Positions 21,632-41,253 of a stretch of DNA of 64,000 nt are shown piece after piece; the first letter of the stretch is position 1, and each line of letters opens with the position of its first letter. The notes under the pieces were generated by a model. That model did no database searches, had not been told where the DNA came from, and worked only from the letters and a program-made list of their open reading frames with translations. Both the position numbers and the translations under genes were made by a program. Location of the stretch: the sequence record MN695334.1; one strand, given 5' to 3'.

Positions 21632-22891
21632 ATGACAATTTACAGTCTCACTGAAGCCTATTCTGAAATTTATGATTTAAGAAAAGTAGAAGAGATCGAT
21701 GATAATCTCCGCTTTATTGATTATATGCTTGATGAGGATATTGAGGAAGTGGTCGAATCTTTAGTTTGGGAATTCCGTGATTATGGAAATACTTTAGATG
21801 AATCTTTCGATCTACTTGAATATTCTGCTAGCAGTGAAGTAATTAATGAATCTTATACTCAAATTATAGAAGATCTTTTAAATGAAGCAACTGTCACATA
21901 TGGTAGGGGTGACGTTCTTGCAAATAAAGCAAAAGCAGATGAACTAGCAAAAAGAAATAAAGATAGAAGTACTGCACAAAGAAAAGAAGTTAGACGAGCT
22001 AGAGTTGATGGTGCAATTAGTAAAGTAAAGGCTGCTATGGCTGGTGCCAAAGGTGGTATGGGTCGGGCTTCCAAGGCTTTAGGTGGTGCAGTTAGTAAAG
22101 GCCGGAATCTAGTTGGCGCTGTCGCACAAAAGGGTAAGGCTCTACTTGGCCGACTTCTTCGCAAGGGTGCCAGCGCAACAGGAAAGGTAGTATCTGGTGT
22201 TGGTAAGACCATACAGAAAAGTGGTGAAACTGCTGCATCAGCATCCAGAGCCGAAAGAACTGTTAGAGTCCCAGGTGGTGAGTATGTAAGAGATCCAGGT
22301 GGTAGTAAGAGACAAACTGTAGGAAAAGCCGTTCGTAAAGTCGGAGTCGCCTTACAGAGAATGAGTAAAGGTGAAAAATCTACTCCAACAAAACCAGAAG
22401 CCCCTAAAATGAAGGCTTTACCTCCAGCTAGACCAGAGACAGAAAATCGTCGTGCAGCAGTACAAAGAAAACTTGATACTGCAAATAAAGGATCTACTGG
22501 TGATAAAAGAGTGGGTTCTCCTTCTCCTACGTTGGCTTTACCAGCAAAAACTTCCGGTAAACCCGCCGTAGAGAGAGTTATTTCACAACGCAAACTACAG
22601 GCCGCTGCTAAATTACAAAGATCTGCAACTGGATCTCGGGCTCGTGGTATAAGATTTGCTGGCCCTAATTCAAAATTATCTTCCACTAGAGCCAATACTG
22701 GATATAAAGAAAAGCTTGCAAAATTTGCTAGCAAATTAAACAATGAAGATTATGAAATTTTAATTGATTATATCATTGAGGATATAATTTCTTCTGGATA
22801 TGCTTTAGATGAGATGGCTGCTCTTGATATATTTGAAAATCTCACCGAAGATACTATTGCCGACATCGCATTAGAATATCTGAACGACTGA
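21632..22891 (+). CDS. Late hypothetical protein: acidic - long basic - acidic
   Basis: TAAATA 21599; acidic N-terminus ending LLNEA, about 290-aa K/R/A/G-rich core, acidic C-terminus. Confidence 0.65.
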   Translation: MTIYSLTEAYSEIYDLRKVEEIDDNLRFIDYMLDEDIEEVVESLVWEFRDYGNTLDESFDLLEYSASSEVINESYTQIIEDLLNEATVTYGRGDVLANKAKADELAKRNKDRSTAQRKEVRRARVDGAISKVKAAMAGAKGGMGRASKALGGAVSKGRNLVGAVAQKGKALLGRLLRKGASATGKVVSGVGKTIQKSGETAASASRAERTVRVPGGEYVRDPGGSKRQTVGKAVRKVGVALQRMSKGEKSTPTKPEAPKMKALPPARPETENRRAAVQRKLDTANKGSTGDKRVGSPSPTLALPAKTSGKPAVERVISQRKLQAAAKLQRSATGSRARGIRFAGPNSKLSSTRANTGYKEKLAKFASKLNNEDYEILIDYIIEDIISSGYALDEMAALDIFENLTEDTIADIALEYLND

Positions 22892-23043
22892 TGATACATG
22901 TAACTGACGTTTATGATTTAAAAGCAAAACTTAATCTTTTAAAGCATAAGCTAAGGGATGAAAAAAGATCACAAAAAGAAAAGGACTTTGTTGACGAATA
23001 CCTCAATGAGGTCCTCTTTTTAGTGGATTCGATGCTTCTGTAA
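22891..23043 (+). CDS. Small hypothetical protein (50 aa, below ORF-track cutoff)
   Basis: MIHVTDVYDLKAKLNLLKHKL...[14 protein letters not shown]; start coupled to upstream TGA. Confidence 0.55.
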   Translation: MIHVTDVYDLKAKLNLLKHKLRDEKRSQKEKDFVDEYLNEVLFLVDSMLL

Positions 23044-30629: not shown

Positions 30630-33600
30630 ATGCCAGAATATTTAAGCGGTAAAAAAAGAACACAAAAAATAGGTATTAACAGCTATTCAGAAAATACTGA
30701 TACGACTGAAATTGTTGGTAATATTTTAGTTAATTCTGGTAAAATTGGTGTGGGTACAACTGTCCCAACACAAGATGTAGATGTAGAAACAATACGTATA
30801 AGAGATGATTTATATGATTATACTAATTTTCCTGGGTCGTTAGGTTATTTTTTAAGTAAAGATGCTGGCGGAATTAAATGGGTTGAAGTTCCGCCTATTG
30901 ATTCCTCGTCTATACTTGTTTCTGAAAATAATAATATTGTAGGGGTAAGTTCTTTTATTGGAATTAATATTATTTCGGATGATTTTCCAATTGTTAATCC
31001 AAATCCATCGAATCCGAATATTGCGGATATTAATTTAGTTCAAAGATGGGTAAAGAGTGGTGATTCTGGAATATATACTACAAAAAATGTAGGTATTGGA
31101 ACGACTATTCCAGTAACGGATTTCCAGGTTGGGTTTGGGACAACTGGTGTTACTATTGATGGGGGAGTTGGTGTCGTTAGTGCATTAGGTTATTTTGGAG
31201 AATATGCCAACATTAATGATTTAATTGTAGACCAAGTAACTGTTACAAATACGTTAAATGTCACAGGTTTGGGTGGATCCAATATTTCTGTATCTCTTGC
31301 CTCAAATGGTGGAATAACTACCACAGGAGGTGACCTTTATGTTGGTGGTCTTTTAGTTGCAGGTTTAATAGAAATTGAAAGTTTAGAGGTTAAAAATATA
31401 AATTCGACTGGTATTTCAACTTTCAATATTGCAAATATTAATGTTGGTATTTTGACTGATCTTGTCGTAACCGGATTAACATCGACAAAAAATATAAACG
31501 TAGATGGAAATCTTATTGCATCTGGTATAATAACTTCACCCATTTTTGTTGGTGATCTGATAGGGAATGCAACTACTGCAGATTATGCAACACTTGCTGG
31601 ATTTGCTTCCGCTTCTGCTGGTATAGCAACTTTTGCGGCATTTGCTGGATATGCAACCTCTGCCGGTATAGCGACATATTCTTCTTTTGCGGGTATATCT
31701 ACTTTTGCAACCTCTGCGGGATATGCCGCAACTGCTGGTATAGCGACATATGCAATTTCTGCAGGTATAGCTACATATTCCTCTTCTGCAGGTATAGCCA
31801 CCTTTGCAACTACTGCTGGATATGCTGTAATTGCTGGTGTAGCTACATATTCCTCTTCCGCCGGTATATCTACTTTTGCAACCTCTGCGGGATATGCCGC
31901 AACTGCTGGTATAGCGACATATGCAACCTCTGCAGGTATAGCGACCTTTGCAATCTCTGCTGGATACGCCGCAACTGCTGGTGTAGCCACATATTCTTCT
32001 TTTGCTGGTATAGCGACATTTGCAACTACTGCTGGATACGCCGCAACTGCTGGTGTAGCCACATATTCTTCTTTTGCTGGTATAGCCACCTTTGCAACTA
32101 CTGCTGGATATGCAAGAACTGCAGGTATATCTACTTTTGCAATCTCTGCTGGATATGCCGCAACGGCTGGTATAGCGACCTTTGCTACCTTTGCTGCTTC
32201 TTCTGCAGGTATAGCCACTTTTGCGGCATTTGCTGGGTATGCCACCTCTGCTGGTATAGCGACCTTTGCTACCTTTGCTGCTTCTTCTGCAGGTATAGCC
32301 ACTTTTGCGACATTTGCTGGATATGCAACTTCTGCCGGTATATCGTCATACGCTTCTTCTGCTGGTATATCTACTTTTGCAACTACTGCTGGTATAGCCA
32401 CTTTTGCGGCCTTTGCTGGATATGCAACCTCCGCAGGTATATCTACTTTTGCAACTACCGCTGGTATAGCGACATTTGCAATCTCTGCTGGATATGCCGC
32501 AACCGCAGGTATATCTACTTTTGCAACTACTGCTGGTATAGCCACCTTTGCAACTACTGCTGGATATGCAAGAACTGCAGGTATATCTACTTTTGCAACT
32601 ACCGCTGGTATAGCGACCTTTGCAACTACTGCTGGATATGCAGCAACTGCAGGTATAGCGACCTTTGCTCAATTTGCTGCTTCTTCCGCCGGTATAGCGA
32701 CTTTTGCGGCCATTTCTGGGTATGCTGCAACTGCAGGTATAGCGACCTTTGCAACCTCTGCTGGATACGCAGCAACTGCTGGCATAGCCACCTTTGCAAC
32801 TACTGCTGGCATAGCCACCTTTGCAACTACTGCTGGATATGCAGCAACTGCAGGTATAGCCACTTTTGCTACCTTTGCTGCTTCTTCTGCAGGTATAGCC
32901 ACTTTTGCGGCATTTGCTGGATATGCAACTTCTGCAGGTATAGCGACCTTTGCAACTACTGCTGGATATGCAAGAACTGCAGGTATATCTACTTTTGCAA
33001 CTACCGCTGGTATAGCGACCTTTGCAACTACTGCTGGTATAGCCACCTTTGCAACTACTGCTGGATATGCAGCAACTGCAGGTATAGCGACCTTTGCTCA
33101 ATTTGCTGCTTCTTCCGCCGGTATAGCGACTTTTGCGGCCATTTCTGGGTATGCTGCAACTGCAGGTATAGCCACTTTTGCGGCATTTGCTGGATATGCA
33201 ACTTCTGCCGGTATAGCGACCTTTGCAACTACNGCTGGTATAGCGACATTTGCAACTACCGCTGGATATGCCGCAACTGCAGGTATAGCGACCTTTGCAA
33301 CTACTGCTGGTATAGCCACCTTTGCAACTACCGCTGGATATGCCGCAACTGCAGGTATAGCGACCTTTGCAACTACCGCTGGATACGCAGCAACTGCTGG
33401 TATAGCCACTTTTGCGGCCTTTGCTGGGTATGCCACCTCTGCAGGTATAGCTACCTTTGCTCAATTTGCTGCTTCTTCTTCTGGTATAGCAACTATTGCG
33501 ACCTTTGCAACTACTGCTGGATATGCTGCAACTGCTGGCATAGCCACCTTTGCTCAATTTGCCGCTTCTTCTGCAGGTATAGCCACTTTTGCGGCCACTG

Positions 33601-38446: not shown

Positions 38447-38677
38447 ATGGCAAAGACTTCTTATAGCAGGCACCAAGCACAAAAGCTTAAGAATAAATGG
38501 GAGAGGTTGAGTAAACATTTAGAATATATTCCCGAAAGTTCACTTTCTTTTGGTAAACTATTTAAACAGGATCCATGTGATTGTGGGAATCCAAAATGTG
38601 CCATTTGTAGCTACCCTAAGCGTTTTCGTAAAAACAAACTAAACAAAAACACCGAAGTTTTTGATGAGTTTGCCTGA
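38447..38677 (+). CDS. Basic hypothetical protein with CDCG.PKC.IC..P.R motif
   Basis: 76-aa ORF. Confidence 0.6.
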   Translation: MAKTSYSRHQAQKLKNKWERLSKHLEYIPESSLSFGKLFKQDPCDCGNPKCAICSYPKRFRKNKLNKNTEVFDEFA

Positions 38678-38780: not shown

Positions 38781-38843
38781 TAAGATCAGTCAGCAACAAC
38801 ACATACAGTAGTCTCTTAAACTAACCCGTAAAAACTGATCTTG
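38781..38843 (+). ncRNA. Hairpin element copy 1 (stem + CAGCAA + A-rich loop)
   Basis: AAGATCAGT 38782-38790 / ACTGATCTT 38834-38842; CAGCAA 38791-38796. Confidence 0.7.
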
Positions 38844-38846
38844 CCT

Positions 38847-38899
38847 TAAGTTGATACAGCATAAAAAACTGTAGCAAAAAAACAAACCCAATCAACTTG
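38847..38899 (+). ncRNA. Hairpin element copy 2
   Basis: AAGTTGAT 38848-38855 / ATCAACTT 38891-38898; ACAGCAT follows the 5' strand; ends 7 nt before ATG. Confidence 0.7.
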
Positions 38900-38906
38900 T
38901 GAAAAA

Positions 38907-40382
38907 ATGACTTTTATTACTGCACTTGAATCTGAATTGAATACCACCGAAACTCTAAATGGAGCTAAGGCATATAAATCTACTCTCAACAAATGCCTGG
39001 ATCTTTTTGGTAAGATCGGCGCATGTCGCAATAATATCAAACAGGCAGAAAAACTGTTTGATCTAGCATATCGAGAAGATCCTGAAACTGCAACTCGTAT
39101 TCTTTTCTGGGTAAGGGATGTACGTGGAGGTAGCGGTGAGCGTAGTATCTTCCGCACTCTATTTAAAAATCTTGTCCAAAAGAATCAAGAGCTTGGCCAA
39201 AAGCTAGTAGCACTTGTTCCTGAGTATGGTCGTTGGGACGATCTGCTCGTTCTGGAAAATACTTCCGTTTGGAATCAAGTTTTAGATTTGATTACACATC
39301 AACTGAATACCGACCAAATTATGATGGCCAGTGGTGGTCAGGTTTCTCTACTCGCTAAGTGGCTTCCAAGCATTAACGCATCCAGTAAAGACAGCAAGCG
39401 TCTTGGACGTGAAATCGCTGAACATATGGTACTGACTGAAAGGCAGTATCGGAAAACTCTGGCTCGTCTTCGCTCTCATATTAAAATTGTGGAGCAGCAA
39501 ATGTGCTCTAAGGAATGGTCTGCCATTGATTATTCCAAAGTACCTTCACGAGCTTCTTTCATGTATCGTAAGGCATTTGGAAAACAGGATCCTACCCGAT
39601 ATCAGAAATATCTAACTGATGTTGAGAATGGCAAGGCAAAAATCAATGCGAGCACCCTATATCCATATGATGTTGTAGATCAGTATCTCAATAAGGGAGC
39701 ACGGGGAGATAAGACTATTGATCTTCAATGGGAAGCTCTACCAAACTATATGGGTGATAATCTCCTAAATGGTCTTGTTGTAGCTGATGTTTCTGGTTCC
39801 ATGACTCAAAATAATGGACTACCGTTGGCCGTTTCTATCTCTCTTGCGATGTATATTGCAGAGAGAAATGCATCACCAGTTTGGAAAGACAAGTTCATTA
39901 CTTTCTCTAGTCAACCTGAGTTGCAAACTGTTGTTGGTAAAACTATTGGAGAACGTATTCAAAATCTTTCCAGAGCAGATTGGGGATATAATACTGATCT
40001 CATCAGCGTATTCAAAACTATTCTGAAAGCAGCTAAGAGTAAAGATGTTGCTCCAGTGGATATGCCACAAAAAGTAATTATTGTTTCTGATATGCAATTT
40101 GATCAAGCTTGTGTTTCTAACAAACGAACTAGCTTTGAGCATATTGAAAAACTCTATCGTGCTTCTGGGTATGAGTTACCTCAACTGGTCTTTTGGAATG
40201 TCAATGCAATTGGAGCTAATGTTCCAATGACCGTTGCTGATTACAATACCTGTTTGGTTTCTGGTTGTTCCCCATCCATCTTAAAATCTGTTCTCAAAGG
40301 TGAAATTGTCACTGCTGTGGATATGATGAGTGATGCTGTATATTCTGAAAGGTATGTGCAGGTCGGAGCGGCATTCAACTAA
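38907..40382 (+). CDS. DUF2828-family TROVE-related/vWA protein (Ro60-like architecture)
   Basis: TETLNGA, FWVRDVRGGSGER, YGRWDDL, LLAKWLPS, MIDAS DVSGS, SDMQFD, FWNVN. Confidence 0.85.
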   Translation: MTFITALESELNTTETLNGAKAYKSTLNKCLDLFGKIGACRNNIKQAEKLFDLAYREDPETATRILFWVRDVRGGSGERSIFRTLFKNLVQKNQELGQKLVALVPEYGRWDDLLVLENTSVWNQVLDLITHQLNTDQIMMASGGQVSLLAKWLPSINASSKDSKRLGREIAEHMVLTERQYRKTLARLRSHIKIVEQQMCSKEWSAIDYSKVPSRASFMYRKAFGKQDPTRYQKYLTDVENGKAKINASTLYPYDVVDQYLNKGARGDKTIDLQWEALPNYMGDNLLNGLVVADVSGSMTQNNGLPLAVSISLAMYIAERNASPVWKDKFITFSSQPELQTVVGKTIGERIQNLSRADWGYNTDLISVFKTILKAAKSKDVAPVDMPQKVIIVSDMQFDQACVSNKRTSFEHIEKLYRASGYELPQLVFWNVNAIGANVPMTVADYNTCLVSGCSPSILKSVLKGEIVTAVDMMSDAVYSERYVQVGAAFN

Positions 40383-40414
40383 TTTAACTAAAATTATCCA
40401 AAGAGGCTAAACTA

Positions 40415-40582
40415 GTGGAAATTTATGTTCGATGGATTGGTGGAAAGTATGCAGAGGTTCATGTTGACTTTACTGGGGGTCACATTGAAAGTGGACTTCT
40501 CAATTGCAACGAACAAGTTGCTTATGGTGCCATGTTTCGTGAATTAGCGAATGAATTGGACCCAGAAACGACTGATGATTGA
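40415..40582 (+). CDS. Small hypothetical protein (55 aa, GTG start)
   Basis: AGAGG Shine-Dalgarno at 40402; MEIYVRWIGGKYAEVHVDF...ELDPETTDD*. Confidence 0.5.
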   Translation: MEIYVRWIGGKYAEVHVDFTGGHIESGLLNCNEQVAYGAMFRELANELDPETTDD

Positions 40583-40621
40583 CCGCAATGGCCCAGTGGC
40601 CATTAATTTCGAAAAGGGGGG

Positions 40622-40650
40622 TTGACAAGCTCGCCCCCCTCTGCTAAGAT
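40622..40650 (+). promoter_or_regulatory. Sigma70-type promoter driving the RNA array
   Basis: TTGACA-17 nt-TAAGAT with extended TG; first hairpin starts 8 nt downstream. Confidence 0.8.
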
Positions 40651-40657
40651 AAATTCA

Positions 40658-40709
40658 TAGATGATTCAGCCATTAAACTTTTTTTGGTAAAAAACACAAC
40701 ATCATCTAG
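40658..40709 (+). ncRNA. Hairpin element copy 3
   Basis: TAGATGAT / ATCATCTA stem, TCAGCCA, inner T7-GGT-A6 hairpin. Confidence 0.75.
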
Positions 40710-40720
40710 ATTTAAAACCT

Positions 40721-40767
40721 TAGGTGGTTCAGCAACTAAAAACATAGTAAGTTAAAAAACCACCTAG
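40721..40767 (+). ncRNA. Hairpin element copy 4
   Basis: TAGGTGGTT / AACCACCTA 9-bp stem, CAGCAA. Confidence 0.75.
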
Positions 40768-40774
40768 TTAATTT

Positions 40775-40884
40775 CGGGGAATAGCTCAATGGTAGAGCAA
40801 CGTAAAATATATCTAGTTTAGATATTAACTGCAATTTAAAGCATTCGGAGCCGTTGGTTGTAGGTTCGAATCCTGCTTCCCCGA
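40775..40884 (+). tRNA. tRNA with TCG anticodon (Arg) carrying a 38-nt insertion (40803-40840) in the anticodon stem
   Basis: Acceptor CGGGGAA/TTCCCCG, D arm GCTC/GAGC, T arm GTAGG-TTCGAAT-CCTGC; deleting 40803-40840 gives ACGGC-ATTCGGA-GCCGT. Confidence 0.8.
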
Positions 40885-40885
40885 T

Positions 40886-40936
40886 TAGATGATTCAGCCA
40901 TTAAACTTTTTTTTGGTAAAAAACAACATCATCTAG
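40886..40936 (+). ncRNA. Hairpin element copy 5 (near-identical to copy 3)
   Basis: TAGATGAT / ATCATCTA, TCAGCCA; differs from copy 3 only in T-run length and a CA. Confidence 0.75.
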
Positions 40937-40954
40937 ATTTTTTGAATGTCTCCT

Positions 40955-41027
40955 GGGCGCATGGTGAAGTGGATTATCACTAGGAGCTTCTACCTCCTCA
41001 TCCCTGGTTCGAATCCAGGTGCGCCTG
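40955..41027 (+). tRNA. tRNA-Arg(TCT)
   Basis: Acceptor GGGCGCA/TGCGCCT, anticodon arm AGGAG-CTTCTAC-CTCCT, T arm CCTGG-TTCGAAT-CCAGG. Confidence 0.93.
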
Positions 41028-41069
41028 TTAAAGTGACATACTTCCTTCTTTTACTATATAATATATAAT

Positions 41070-41142
41070 GCGAAATTAGTTCAGCGGCTAGAACGCTATC
41101 CTTCCAAGTTAGATGTCACCGGTTCGAATCCGGTATTTCGCT
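41070..41142 (+). tRNA. tRNA-Gly(TCC)
   Basis: Acceptor GCGAAAT/ATTTCGC, loop CTTCCAA, T arm ACCGG-TTCGAAT-CCGGT. Confidence 0.93.
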
Positions 41143-41179
41143 TAACAATCAATGACAAACGTATTACGATTGTGTGAAC

Positions 41180-41253
41180 GGGAACGTAGCTCAATTGGTT
41201 AGAGCACCCACCTTATAAGTGGGAGGTTCTGGGTTCAATCCCCAGCGTTCCTA
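41180..41253 (+). tRNA. tRNA-Ile(TAT)
   Basis: Acceptor GGGAACG/CGTTCCT, anticodon arm CCCAC-CTTATAA-GTGGG, T arm CTGGG-TTCAATC-CCCAG. Confidence 0.92.

What the first reader, a model, noticed from the sequence alone, without database searches (positions are those of the whole stretch)
38781..40936. Candidate phage Ro60-like RNP system: DUF2828/vWA protein plus an array of motif-bearing small hairpin RNAs
Seen in sequence: five elements flank the gene (38781-38843, 38847-38899, 40658-40709, 40721-40767, 40886-40936). Each has an 8-9 bp stem joining its ends, starts TAG/TAAG, ends CTAG/CTTG, and has W-CAGC-M-W right after the 5' strand, then an A-rich loop of variable length. Four different stem sequences keep full pairing. 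Three elements sit behind a dedicated sigma70 promoter, interleaved with tRNAs. Established: TROVE/Ro60 proteins have a helical ring plus a MIDAS vWA domain, bind the terminal stem of Y RNAs, and occur near tRNA and RNA-repair genes. Inference: these elements are Y-RNA analogues for the DUF2828 clade, perhaps protecting, chaperoning or repairing tRNAs against host anticodon nucleases. They do not match the classical Y RNA stem. I know of no description of this motif but could not search.
Basis: partly seen in the sequence, partly recalled or inferred. Interest (0 to 1): 0.92.

Follow-up and report, generated by a model that had tools for sequence, protein, structure and literature searches.

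The report
Phage Ro60-like protein with partner RNAs
A cyanophage gene for a Ro60-like RNA-binding protein is flanked by small hairpin RNAs and a tRNA look-alike that share one conserved motif, and the same motif sits beside this gene family in many unrelated phages, which points to a widespread protein-RNA particle that I could not find described.

Summary
The window is the last 64 kb of Synechococcus phage B3. All five hairpins are exactly as described. A sixth copy of the motif, circularly permuted, sits inside the 'pseudo-tRNA' at 40775-40884.

The module is a 6-9 bp helix (WAGRY.../...RYCUW), a conserved G after its 3' strand, CAGCAAU on one side and an A-rich strand on the other.

**Specificity.** A covariance model finds it nowhere else in the 245 kb B3 genome, and not in a control cyanophage tRNA cluster.

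**Recurrence.** It recurs beside homologs of the DUF2828 gene, always on the gene's strand. This includes FelixO1/Bas63, mycobacteriophages, and Listeria, Staphylococcus, Campylobacter and Bacillus phages. In independent bacterial genome contigs all 55 hits were on the gene's strand. The helix covaries.

**Reverse test.** A search with the RNA pattern alone recovers the gene in 40 of 80 stretches, all on the same strand.

**tRNA mimicry.** Many copies enclose a permuted tRNA-like domain, as YrlA Y RNAs do.

**The protein.** It folds like Ro60 (best PDB matches) but is not TROVE by sequence.

**Prior art.** Rfam 15 and the searchable literature hold no description of these RNAs. The protein's Ro60 likeness is already known, as is an anti-defence role for the Bas63 homolog.

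Binding and function remain untested.

The parts
38781..38843 (+). Hairpin RNA element 1. It has a 9-10 bp terminal helix (TAAGATCAGT/ACTGATCTTG), CAGCAAC, an inner small hairpin and an A-rich 3' loop side.
   Evidence: R1 gives 32.8 bits, E 7e-4. Orthologous elements sit about 130 nt upstream of the gene in more than 40 related loci.
38847..38899 (+). Hairpin RNA element 2 (helix AAGTTGAT/ATCAACTT, CAGCAUA). It ends 8 nt before the start codon of the protein gene, so it may also be part of the mRNA leader.
   Evidence: The element at about -65 is conserved in position and stem in related loci. R1 does not report it.
38907..40382 (+). Gene gp345, 491 aa. It is a DUF2828 + DUF7788 (vWA) protein with a predicted Ro60-like fold and MIDAS residues.
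   Evidence: - Pfam PF11443 E 1.3e-39 and PF25043 E 3.4e-50.
- phrog_850 'RNA-binding protein'.
- AF2 model with pLDDT 80.
- Foldseek top 8 PDB hits are all Ro60/TROVE.
- Invariant D294-x-S296-x-S298, T363 and D395.
40622..40650 (+). Sigma-70-like promoter (TTGACA, 17 nt spacer, TGn-TAAGAT). Its expected start site coincides with the first base of element 3. The -35 hexamer lies in the loop of a G6/C6 hairpin (40616-40639).
   Evidence: (10 of 12 matches, extended -10) and the sequence. This is a consensus match only. The same layout, promoter then hairpin start, is seen in Bacillus phage vB_BcoS-136.
40658..40709 (+). Hairpin RNA element 3 (helix TAGATGAT/ATCATCTA, CAGCCAU).
   Evidence: R1 gives 41.4 bits, E 1e-5.
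40721..40767 (+). Hairpin RNA element 4 (helix TAGGTGGTT/AACCACCTA, CAGCAAC).
   Evidence: The fold has z = -3.7. R1 gives 39.4 bits, E 3e-5.
40775..40884 (+). tRNA-like RNA (annotated tRNA-Pseudo-GCA). Its anticodon arm is interrupted by the same module in capped, circularly permuted form:
- AAAAU
- ATATCTA (40809-40815)
- GTT
- TAGATAT (40819-40825)
- TAA
- CTGCAAT (40829-40835)
   Evidence: - Rfam tRNA 51.4 bits.
- ARAGORN needs a 40 nt 'intron' to call it.
- 30 of 30 related tRNA-like genes carry the module.
- Acceptor, D and T arms covary in 14 of 15 pairs.
- It is the only capped module in the B3 genome.
40886..40936 (+). Hairpin RNA element 5, a near-duplicate of element 3. It is wedged between the tRNA-like gene and tRNA-Arg.
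   Evidence: R1 gives 38.8 bits, E 4e-5.
40954..41253 (+). tRNA-Arg(UCU), tRNA-Gly(UCC) and tRNA-Ile(UAU). They lie downstream in the same presumed transcript. Their processing would release the neighbouring elements.
   Evidence: ARAGORN and Rfam. Co-transcription and processing are inferred.

Best explanation
The hairpins and the interrupted tRNA-like gene are small non-coding RNAs that carry a common protein-binding module. They are most likely the cognate RNA partners of the adjacent Ro60-like protein (DUF2828 ring plus vWA domain), as Y RNAs are for Ro60.

**Shown here**
- The module is a covarying 6-9 bp helix with conserved outer pairs. A conserved G follows its 3' strand. CAGCAAU lies on the 5' side of the adjoining loop or junction and an A-rich strand on the 3' side.
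- It occurs in two topologies. In one it is an open-ended terminal stem with variable cargo in the loop. In the other it is a capped stem-loop grafted where a tRNA's anticodon arm would be.
- It is tightly and strand-specifically linked to DUF2828 genes across very distant phages.
- The protein has a Ro60-like fold.

**Inferred**
- The RNAs are transcribed with the gene or from the promoter at 40622-40650.
- They are cut free by tRNA-processing enzymes.
- The protein binds the helix and the CAGCAAU junction, while the variable part (A-rich loop, T arm, or whole tRNA mimic) recruits or decoys other factors.
- By analogy with Rsr-YrlA-RtcB operons, and from frequent RtcB or RNA-ligase neighbours, the particle most likely acts in RNA (tRNA) surveillance or repair during infection, or in counter-defence.
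- Element 2, 8 nt before the start codon, may also let the protein repress its own translation.
For: **Forward association**
- A hairpin scan of 61 related loci gives 5.2 hits/kb on the gene strand within 250 nt upstream and 0.78/kb within 2.5 kb downstream. Elsewhere and on the other strand it gives about 0.02-0.2/kb.
- Model R1 gives 55 plus-strand and 0 minus-strand hits in 623 kb of viral loci.
- R1 gives 55 plus-strand and 0 minus-strand hits in 504 kb of independent bacterial-genome loci, mostly within 600 nt of the gene.
- Hits occur next to the gene in FelixO1, Bas63, Mycobacterium phage Nicholasp3, Bacillus phage 136, Listeria LMTA-57, Staphylococcus S-CoN_Ph6 and Campylobacter NCTC12673.

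**Reverse association**
- An RNA-only pattern search of IMG/VR found a DUF2828 gene in 40 of 80 stored stretches. The gene was on the motif's strand in 40 of 40.

**Controls**
- The rest of the B3 genome, including its main tRNA cluster, has none.
- The S-CRM01 tRNA-rich region has none.

**Structure**
- In the 64 selected elements 90% of helix cells pair and 155 compensatory cells are seen against 56 in shuffles (0/500).
- In the independent set 93% pair and 124 compensatory cells are seen against 40 (0/500).
- CAGCA is invariant in 50 of 50 and the 3' G is conserved in 48 of 50.
- The same module, with its G, is in 30 of 30 tRNA-like genes.

**YrlA-like design**
- The design is terminal stem, T arm, acceptor-like hairpin, then D arm.

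**Protein**
- Foldseek top hits are Ro60 of Thermus phage phiLo, Rsr and Xenopus Ro (E 4.5e-7 to 1e-3, about 510 aligned columns).
- A MIDAS motif is present.

**Neighbours**
- RtcB lies within 3 kb in 20 of 80 genome loci.

**Precedent**
- Y RNAs lie within 4 kb of Ro60 genes and on the same strand (PMC4201824).
- phiLo Ro60 binds two RNAs encoded upstream of its gene (PMC12135203).
Against: - No binding, expression or processing data exist for these RNAs.
- Bas63 gp130 counters the Ppl defence when expressed alone from a plasmid or from T7, so at least that activity does not need the phage RNAs.
- Only about 40-50% of DUF2828 loci show a detectable element within 3-4 kb. None was found near the gene in Vibrio phage nt-1 or Cronobacter phage GAP32.
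- The helix has no bulge and no sequence likeness to the classical Ro-binding helix. The Rfam Y_RNA and YrlA models do not match.
- The protein is not TROVE by sequence, and structural TM-scores are moderate (0.39-0.56).
- The elements used for the first covariation count were selected for having a stem.
Confidence: 0.7

Rival explanations
1. The elements act only in cis. They would be processing, stability or translation-control structures of the DUF2828/tRNA transcripts, for example nuclease entry or stop sites between tRNAs, or an autoregulatory operator in the mRNA leader. They would not be free RNAs that form a particle.
For: - Elements 1 and 2 lie in the leader of the gene, and element 2 ends 8 nt before the ATG.
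- Many copies sit between tRNAs.
- The strand-specific linkage to the gene fits cis control as well.
Against: - In mycobacteriophage, Staphylococcus-phage and other loci the elements lie downstream of the gene, with no tRNAs around them.
- B3's main tRNA cluster and the S-CRM01 tRNA cluster lack them.
- The cargo includes complete tRNA mimics.
- The module is also grafted inside tRNA-like genes. That is hard to explain for a mere punctuation signal.
Confidence: 0.13
2. The RNAs are functional on their own, for example as tRNA decoys for host nucleases or modification enzymes. They would be linked to the DUF2828 gene only because both serve the same pathway, and the protein would not bind them.
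For: - tRNA-like cargo and T arms.
- Variable anticodon-like triplets in the B3-clade tRNA-like genes.
- gp130 of Bas63 works without them against Ppl.
Against: - The invariant part is not the tRNA-like cargo. It is the helix, CAGCAA and G module, which is retained even in minimal hairpins with featureless A-rich loops. That argues for a dedicated reader of the module.
- The only gene constantly next to it is the Ro60-like RNA-binding protein.
Confidence: 0.1
3. The interrupted tRNA-like genes are real tRNAs with a new class of short intron, and the free hairpins are related intron-like or selfish mobile cassettes that spread within tRNA arrays.
For: - ARAGORN can restore a cloverleaf by removing 19-60 nt.
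- The cassette of hairpin, hairpin and tRNA-like gene is duplicated in tandem in a 99% identical relative, L002.
Against: - The anticodons ARAGORN assigns to orthologous genes are inconsistent.
- In other phages the tRNA-like domain is permuted with a closed acceptor stem and can never be a tRNA.
- Stems differ between copies with compensatory changes, rather than being conserved terminal repeats.
- No splicing endonuclease is evident.
- Copies are confined to the DUF2828 locus.
Confidence: 0.05

Closest known systems
Bacterial Ro60 (Rsr) with YrlA/YrlB Y RNAs, often in rsr-yrlBA-rtcBA RNA repair operons (Chen et al. 2014, PMC4201824)
   Same: - One to several small RNAs are encoded within a few kb of the protein gene and on its strand.
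- A terminal stem is formed by the two ends.
- The effector domain mimics tRNA, with T arm, acceptor-like hairpin and D arm in permuted order.
- The protein is a helical ring plus a vWA/MIDAS domain.
- RtcB is a frequent neighbour.
   Different: - The protein is DUF2828/DUF7788, not TROVE, by sequence.
- The RNA module differs: an unbulged helix WAGRY/RYCUW-G plus CAGCAAU and an A-rich strand, instead of the bulged Ro helix and the GNCGAA motif.
- The Rfam YrlA and Y_RNA models do not match.
- Many members are minimal 45-65 nt hairpins.
- In the B3 clade the module is capped and inserted into an otherwise normal-order tRNA body with open acceptor ends.
Ro60 homolog of Thermus phage phiLo with Yrl1/Yrl2 (PMC12135203; PDB 9KOP, 9L5Y)
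   Same: - It is a phage-encoded Ro60-type ring protein with two partner RNAs encoded just upstream of its gene.
- It is the best structural match to the B3 protein model.
- The authors propose a role against host defence.
   Different: - The phiLo RNAs were picked by the YrlA-type CGAA motif and a stem-bulge-stem shape.
- No sequence relation of the proteins is detectable.
- The phiLo RNAs have been shown to bind their protein and host PNPase. Nothing has been shown here.
Bas63 (Felixounavirus) gp130, counter of the Ppl defence system (bioRxiv 10.1101/2024.10.10.617714)
   Same: - It is a true homolog of the B3 protein (35% identity, E 6e-90, full length).
- Its gene sits directly upstream of a tRNA array.
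- The authors noted the Ro60-like fold and guessed that some neighbouring 'tRNA genes' might be Y RNAs.
   Different: - The preprint did not identify the RNAs.
- Here four elements are located in the unannotated gaps of the Bas63 tRNA array, one of them a YrlA-like tRNA mimic.
- gp130 acted against Ppl without these RNAs.
Small stable RNAs in the phage T4 tRNA cluster (species 1 and 2; recalled from memory, not checked here)
   Same: They are non-tRNA stable RNAs interleaved with phage tRNA genes and released by tRNA-processing enzymes.
   Different: No known protein partner or shared motif. The relation was not tested.

Membership tests
Y RNA / YrlA (Rfam RF00019, RF02553) | Encoded close to, and on the same strand as, the gene of a Ro60-type protein | tested here: met
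   - All window elements lie within 130 nt upstream or 560 nt downstream of gp345, on the same strand.
- 110 of 110 model hits in 151 other loci are on the gene's strand.
- The protein is Ro60-like by fold only.
Y RNA / YrlA (Rfam RF00019, RF02553) | The 5' and 3' ends pair into a terminal stem that carries the protein-binding site | tested here: inconclusive
   The terminal helix is present and covaries. The predicted start site coincides with the base of element 3. RNA ends and binding have not been determined.
Y RNA / YrlA (Rfam RF00019, RF02553) | Conserved bulged Ro-binding helix or GNCGAA motif; match to the family covariance models | tested here: not met
   There is no Y_RNA hit. The only YrlA hit in the scanned loci is a 26-bit chance-level match inside a tRNA array (gathering score 69). 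The helix is unbulged and has its own consensus.
Y RNA / YrlA (Rfam RF00019, RF02553) | tRNA-like effector domain (T arm, acceptor-like stem-loop, D arm) attached to the binding stem | tested here: met
   It is present in relatives in FelixO1, Bas63, mycobacteriophage, Bacillus phage and metagenomic loci. In the window it occurs as a topological variant: a normal-order tRNA body with the module capped in the anticodon position, at 40775-40884.
Y RNA / YrlA (Rfam RF00019, RF02553) | Physical association with the Ro60-type protein | not testable with these tools
   Needs RIP/CLIP or gel shifts.
Ro60 / TROVE proteins | TROVE domain detectable by sequence (Pfam PF05731) | tested here: not met
   There is no TROVE hit even at E<=10. 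Single-sequence and profile searches of PDB sequences find no Ro60.
Ro60 / TROVE proteins | Helical-repeat ring followed by a vWA domain (fold) | tested here: met
   The AF2 model has pLDDT 80. The eight best PDB matches are Ro60/TROVE structures over about 505-570 columns, with E 4.5e-7 to 2e-3 and TM 0.39-0.56.
Ro60 / TROVE proteins | MIDAS metal site in the vWA domain (DxSxS...T...D) | tested here: met
   D294, S296, S298, T363 and D395 are invariant in 18 homologs down to 28% identity.
tRNA (RF00005), for 40775-40884 | Acceptor, D and T arms | tested here: met
   Rfam tRNA gives 51.4 bits. 14 of 15 pairs covary among 30 relatives.
tRNA (RF00005), for 40775-40884 | Uninterrupted anticodon stem-loop with a conserved anticodon | tested here: not met
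   A 40 nt insert carries the module. The anticodons ARAGORN calls for orthologs are inconsistent.
Rsr-Y RNA-RtcB type RNA repair operon | RNA ligase (RtcB or Rnl) in the same gene cluster | tested here: not met
   - There is no RtcB or Rnl homolog in the 64 kb window.
- B3 gp24, 188 kb away on the record, is a borderline PHA02142/RNA_ligase match.
- The feature is met in relatives. RtcB lies next to the RNAs and gene in 20 of 80 genome loci. RtcB is also a neighbour in Listeria phage LMTA-57, and an RNA ligase in GAP32.

The most novel reading that the evidence does not exclude
The helix-CAGCAAU-G module may be a portable 'handle' that phages graft onto tRNA bodies in either topology, so that a Ro60-like ring can carry tRNA look-alikes.

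In the B3 clade these look-alikes keep open acceptor ends. They also show fast-changing anticodon-like triplets, including CUA and UUA. They might therefore be processed, CCA-tailed and presented as decoys or sensors for tRNA-targeting host defences, or even act as handled tRNAs.

That would make this a new kind of counter-defence particle rather than a quality-control one.
Probability: 0.15. Interest if true: 0.9.

Novelty: new variant of a known kind. Interest (0 to 1): 0.8.

Why it matters
Ro60 and its Y RNAs are a long-studied but functionally elusive particle. Phage versions have only just begun to be examined.

This finding defines, by sequence and structure, the likely RNA partners of a second, much larger phage family of Ro60-like proteins. 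Homologs occur in 711 of 50,697 phage records, and thousands more turn up in metagenomes. The family includes tractable model phages: FelixO1, Bas63 on E. coli K-12, and cluster-type mycobacteriophages on M. smegmatis.

One member of the protein family is already known to defeat a bacterial defence system. Knowing the RNAs makes several questions directly testable:
- How does a Ro-type ring read its RNA?
- What do the tRNA-mimic cargos recruit?
- Does the particle repair RNAs, decoy defences or regulate?

It also gives annotators a model for dozens of unannotated or mis-annotated stretches in phage tRNA regions, such as tiny spurious ORFs and 'pseudo-tRNAs'.

Tried and rejected
- **Rfam 15.** Scans at permissive E-values of the window region and of nine related loci found only tRNAs and chance-level hits. 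There was no Y_RNA or YrlA match.
- **PDB by sequence.** Single-sequence and profile searches found no Ro60. Only the fold comparison did.
- **Literature.** 'DUF2828' gave only plant and tardigrade papers. Two reviews on bacterial Y RNAs were not held. The supplement of Chen et al. 2014 listing phages was not held, so I cannot exclude that a few DUF2828 phages were in their set.
- **'A feature of phage tRNA clusters in general.'** Rejected. B3's own main tRNA cluster and the 33-tRNA region of S-CRM01 lack the motif.
- **'Terminators.'** Rejected. There are no U-tracts, and the terminator scan lists only tRNA T arms and one intragenic stem.
- **'Transposon-like inverted repeats.'** Rejected. 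The stems differ between copies with compensatory changes, and the module also occurs permuted.
- **RNAalifold on the tRNA-like alignment.** It did not recover the module helix because of gaps. A direct per-sequence scan did.
- **Model R1 limits.** R1 misses element 2 and most long, cargo-bearing members, so its locus counts are lower bounds.
- **RNA ligases.** No RtcB or Rnl homolog was found in the window.


Full report
**Identity of the window.** The window is the last 64 kb of Synechococcus phage B3 (MN695334, 244.9 kb; B23 is identical over the region). The gene at 38907-40382 is gp345, annotated hypothetical. It matches Pfam DUF2828 and DUF7788 and PHROG 850 'RNA-binding protein'.

**The observation.** They have fully paired terminal helices of 8-10 bp with four different sequences, CAGC 0-1 nt after the 5' strand, and A-rich loops. 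Each folds as a terminal-stem hairpin (z -1.9 to -3.7). In the whole window no other intergenic hairpin of this type exists. A consensus promoter (TTGACA, 17 nt spacer, TGn-TAAGAT) ends 7 nt before element 3, so the expected start site is the first base of the helix. This is a pattern match only.

**A sixth copy.** The 'tRNA-Pseudo-GCA' at 40775-40884 scores as tRNA in Rfam (51 bits). ARAGORN accepts it only with a 40 nt 'intron'. The insert reads AAAAU-ATATCTA-GTT-TAGATAT-TAA-CTGCAAT. That is the same helix, the same following G, the same CWGCAAU and the same A-rich strand as in the hairpins. Here, however, the helix is closed by a small loop at its outer end, and the two single strands run into the tRNA body.
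- All 30 related interrupted tRNA-like genes examined carry this capped module.
- Their acceptor, D and T arms covary in 14 of 15 pairs.
- The anticodons a tRNA finder assigns to orthologs are inconsistent.

A structure kept through circular permutation is an RNA-level feature, not a DNA repeat.

**Is it linked to the gene?**

*Forward test.*
- In 61 IMG/VR loci encoding homologs, a simple scan (stem of at least 8 bp plus CAGC) finds 5.2 elements/kb on the gene's strand within 250 nt upstream and 0.78/kb within 2.5 kb downstream. Elsewhere or on the other strand it finds about 0.02-0.2/kb. These loci are related, so the counts are not independent.
- I therefore aligned 64 diverse simple elements and built covariance model R1.
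- R1 finds four of the five window elements at E 1e-5 to 1e-3. It finds nothing else below E=1 in the complete B3 genome, which has a separate cluster of about 19 tRNAs. It also finds nothing in the tRNA-rich 40 kb of cyanophage S-CRM01, which lacks the gene.
- In 71 viral loci with 35-46% identical homologs R1 gives 55 hits, all on the gene's strand.
- In 80 loci from bacterial genome assemblies, none used for training, it again gives 55 hits, all on the gene's strand. They fall in 34 loci, mostly within 600 nt upstream of the gene or just downstream.
- Named phages with elements beside the gene are:
  - FelixO1 (4 elements)
  - Bas63 (4)
  - Mycobacterium phage Nicholasp3 (3)
  - Bacillus phage vB_BcoS-136 (7)
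  - Listeria phage LMTA-57 (3)
  - Staphylococcus phage S-CoN_Ph6 (3)
  - Campylobacter phage NCTC12673 (2)

.
- None was seen near the gene in Vibrio phage nt-1 or Cronobacter phage GAP32.

*Reverse test.* An RNA-only pattern (AGACAC-NN-ACAGCAA, 20-50 nt, GTGTCT) pulled more than 113 stretches from IMG/VR. Of the 80 stored, 40 contain a DUF2828 homolog, in all 40 on the motif's strand and usually 30-250 nt away. Many of the rest have the motif at the edge of the stored piece. The gene occurs in only 711 of 50,697 phage records.

**Anatomy.**
- The consensus from 50 independent hits is (A/U)AG-R-Y-R-S-N, then 1-3 nt (usually WA), then CAGCAA(U/A). CAGCA is invariant in 50 of 50. A variable loop follows, then an A-rich run and the complementary strand ending CU(U/A). 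A conserved unpaired G (48 of 50) comes next, usually followed by U.
- All eight helix pairs show compensatory changes. In the curated set 90% of cells pair and 155 double changes are seen against 56 in shuffles (0/500). In the independent set the figures are 93% and 124 against 40 (0/500). With slid partners only 33-44% of cells pair. The first set was chosen for having a stem, so its percentage paired is partly circular. The second set is fitted to the model. The diversity of compensated stems is the stronger evidence.
- The loop cargo ranges from featureless A-rich sequence, through a lone T arm, to a complete tRNA mimic. The mimic runs in the order T arm, acceptor-like stem-loop, D arm, closed by an inner helix. 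That is the layout of YrlA described by Chen et al. (PMC4201824). Some copies enclose a normal-order tRNA-like sequence (L051, L066, L090).

**The protein.**
- An AlphaFold model built on 18 homologs (pLDDT 80) has as its eight best PDB matches only Ro60/TROVE structures. They are Thermus phage phiLo Ro60 (E 4.5e-7, TM 0.53-0.56), D. radiodurans Rsr and Xenopus Ro60, each aligned over about 505-570 columns.
- The vWA part keeps a MIDAS motif: D294, S296, S298, T363 and D395 are invariant.
- By sequence it is not a TROVE protein.

It works like Ro60 by fold and context, but it is a separate family.

**Gene neighbours.** RtcB lies within 3 kb in 20 of 80 bacterial-genome loci, in the order RtcB, RNAs, gene (PF01139, E 2.6e-106). 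It also lies 1.3 kb downstream in Listeria phage LMTA-57. GAP32 has an RNA ligase directly upstream. The window itself has none. B3 gp24, far away on the record, is a borderline PHA02142/RNA_ligase match, and gp211 is a CCA-adding enzyme. This parallels the bacterial rsr-yrlBA-rtcBA arrangement.

**What is already known.**
- Mycobacteriophage homologs are annotated 'Ro-like RNA binding protein' and others 'RNA-binding protein'.
- A 2024 preprint found that Bas63 gp130 resembles Ro60 and counters the Ppl defence system. I show here that gp130 is a full-length homolog of the B3 protein (35% identity, E 6e-90). gp130 keeps this activity when moved alone to a plasmid or into T7. The authors guessed that some neighbouring tRNA genes might be Y RNAs.
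- The phiLo study showed that a phage Ro60 binds two RNAs encoded upstream of its gene, and host PNPase.
- Chen et al. searched only around TROVE-annotated genes.
- I found no paper or Rfam family describing the CAGCAA module or these RNAs. The searchable library is incomplete.

**Most likely mechanism.** The elements are transcribed with the gene, or from their own promoter together with tRNAs. tRNA-processing enzymes release them, and the Ro60-like protein binds them through the helix-CAGCAAU-G module. The variable cargo then tethers or decoys other factors. Everything in this chain after 'are encoded' is inference. The RtcB neighbours and the tRNA mimicry point to RNA, probably tRNA, surveillance or repair during infection. 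The Bas63 result points to counter-defence, and the two are compatible. Element 2, 8 nt from the start codon, may double as an operator for autoregulation.

**Rivals.** The rivals are cis-only processing signals, protein-independent decoys, and short introns or selfish cassettes. Each is weakened by three points: the module is restricted to DUF2828 loci, it persists without tRNAs, and it occurs in permuted form.

**Verdict.** The feature is real and its recurrence beside the DUF2828 gene is statistically robust. The RNA family and its two topologies appear to be new. It is a new variant of the Ro60-Y RNA kind, and it can be tested directly in laboratory phage-host pairs.

Noticed in passing
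window 40616-40639: A G6/C6 hairpin (GGGGGG-TTGACAAGCTCG-CCCCCC) holds the -35 hexamer of the promoter-like site in its loop. It recalls the promoter stem-loop cassettes described for T4-type phages (from memory).
   Followed up: no
window 40587-40604: A perfect 7 bp hairpin (AATGGCC-CAGT-GGCCATT) lies just after the stop of the 55-aa ORF gp346 (40415-40582). It has no U-tract. gp346 itself has no Pfam or PHROG match and is absent from most related loci, so it may not be a gene.
   Followed up: partly
L002 6832-7363 (99% identical relative of B3): The cassette of hairpin, hairpin and tRNA-like gene is present twice in tandem, followed by a final hairpin. B3 has one cassette plus the final hairpin. 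Copy number therefore changes by tandem duplication of a unit of about 240 nt.
   Followed up: partly
L147 (Bas63) 22749-23023; L346 (Staphylococcus phage S-CoN_Ph6) 5513-5860: Tiny annotated 'hypothetical protein' ORFs overlap the RNA elements (bas63_0137, bas63_0138, CoNPh6_CDS0028, CoNPh6_CDS0029). They are probably spurious calls over non-coding RNA genes.
   Followed up: partly
related loci: L013 7586-7699, L022 7732-7844, L024 7835-7948 and 8096-8209, L043 8434-8548; window 40844-40850: In the tRNA-like genes closest to the window's, the 7 nt stretch that would be the anticodon loop is UU-NNN-AG. Its triplet changes between orthologs (CGG, GGG, GUA, CUA, UGA) while the acceptor stem stays nearly constant. 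This is either an unconstrained linker or a fast-evolving anticodon-like site.
   Followed up: partly
B3 record 31793-33118 (L148) and 99227-99958 (L149), outside the window: gp24 is a borderline PHA02142 OB-fold plus RNA_ligase match (27.8 and 24.9 bits). gp211 is annotated as a CCA tRNA nucleotidyltransferase. B3 therefore carries tRNA end-repair functions away from the locus.
   Followed up: partly
L155-L173 and other genome-contig loci (Oscillospiraceae and other Clostridia MAGs), about 1130-2420: RtcB lies immediately upstream of the RNA elements and the DUF2828 gene. This makes a compact RtcB-RNAs-Ro-like cluster like the Salmonella rsr-yrlBA-rtcBA operon. Whether these are prophages was not examined.
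   Followed up: partly
window 38447-38677: gp344 (76 aa), just upstream of element 1, has a Cys-rich CxC...CxxC stretch and matches phrog_4499 (unknown function).
   Followed up: no
L006 9240-9349: A sub-threshold match to the wcaG RNA motif (RF01761: 34 bits, gathering score 42) lies about 1.8 kb downstream of the gene in a 258 kb relative.
   Followed up: no
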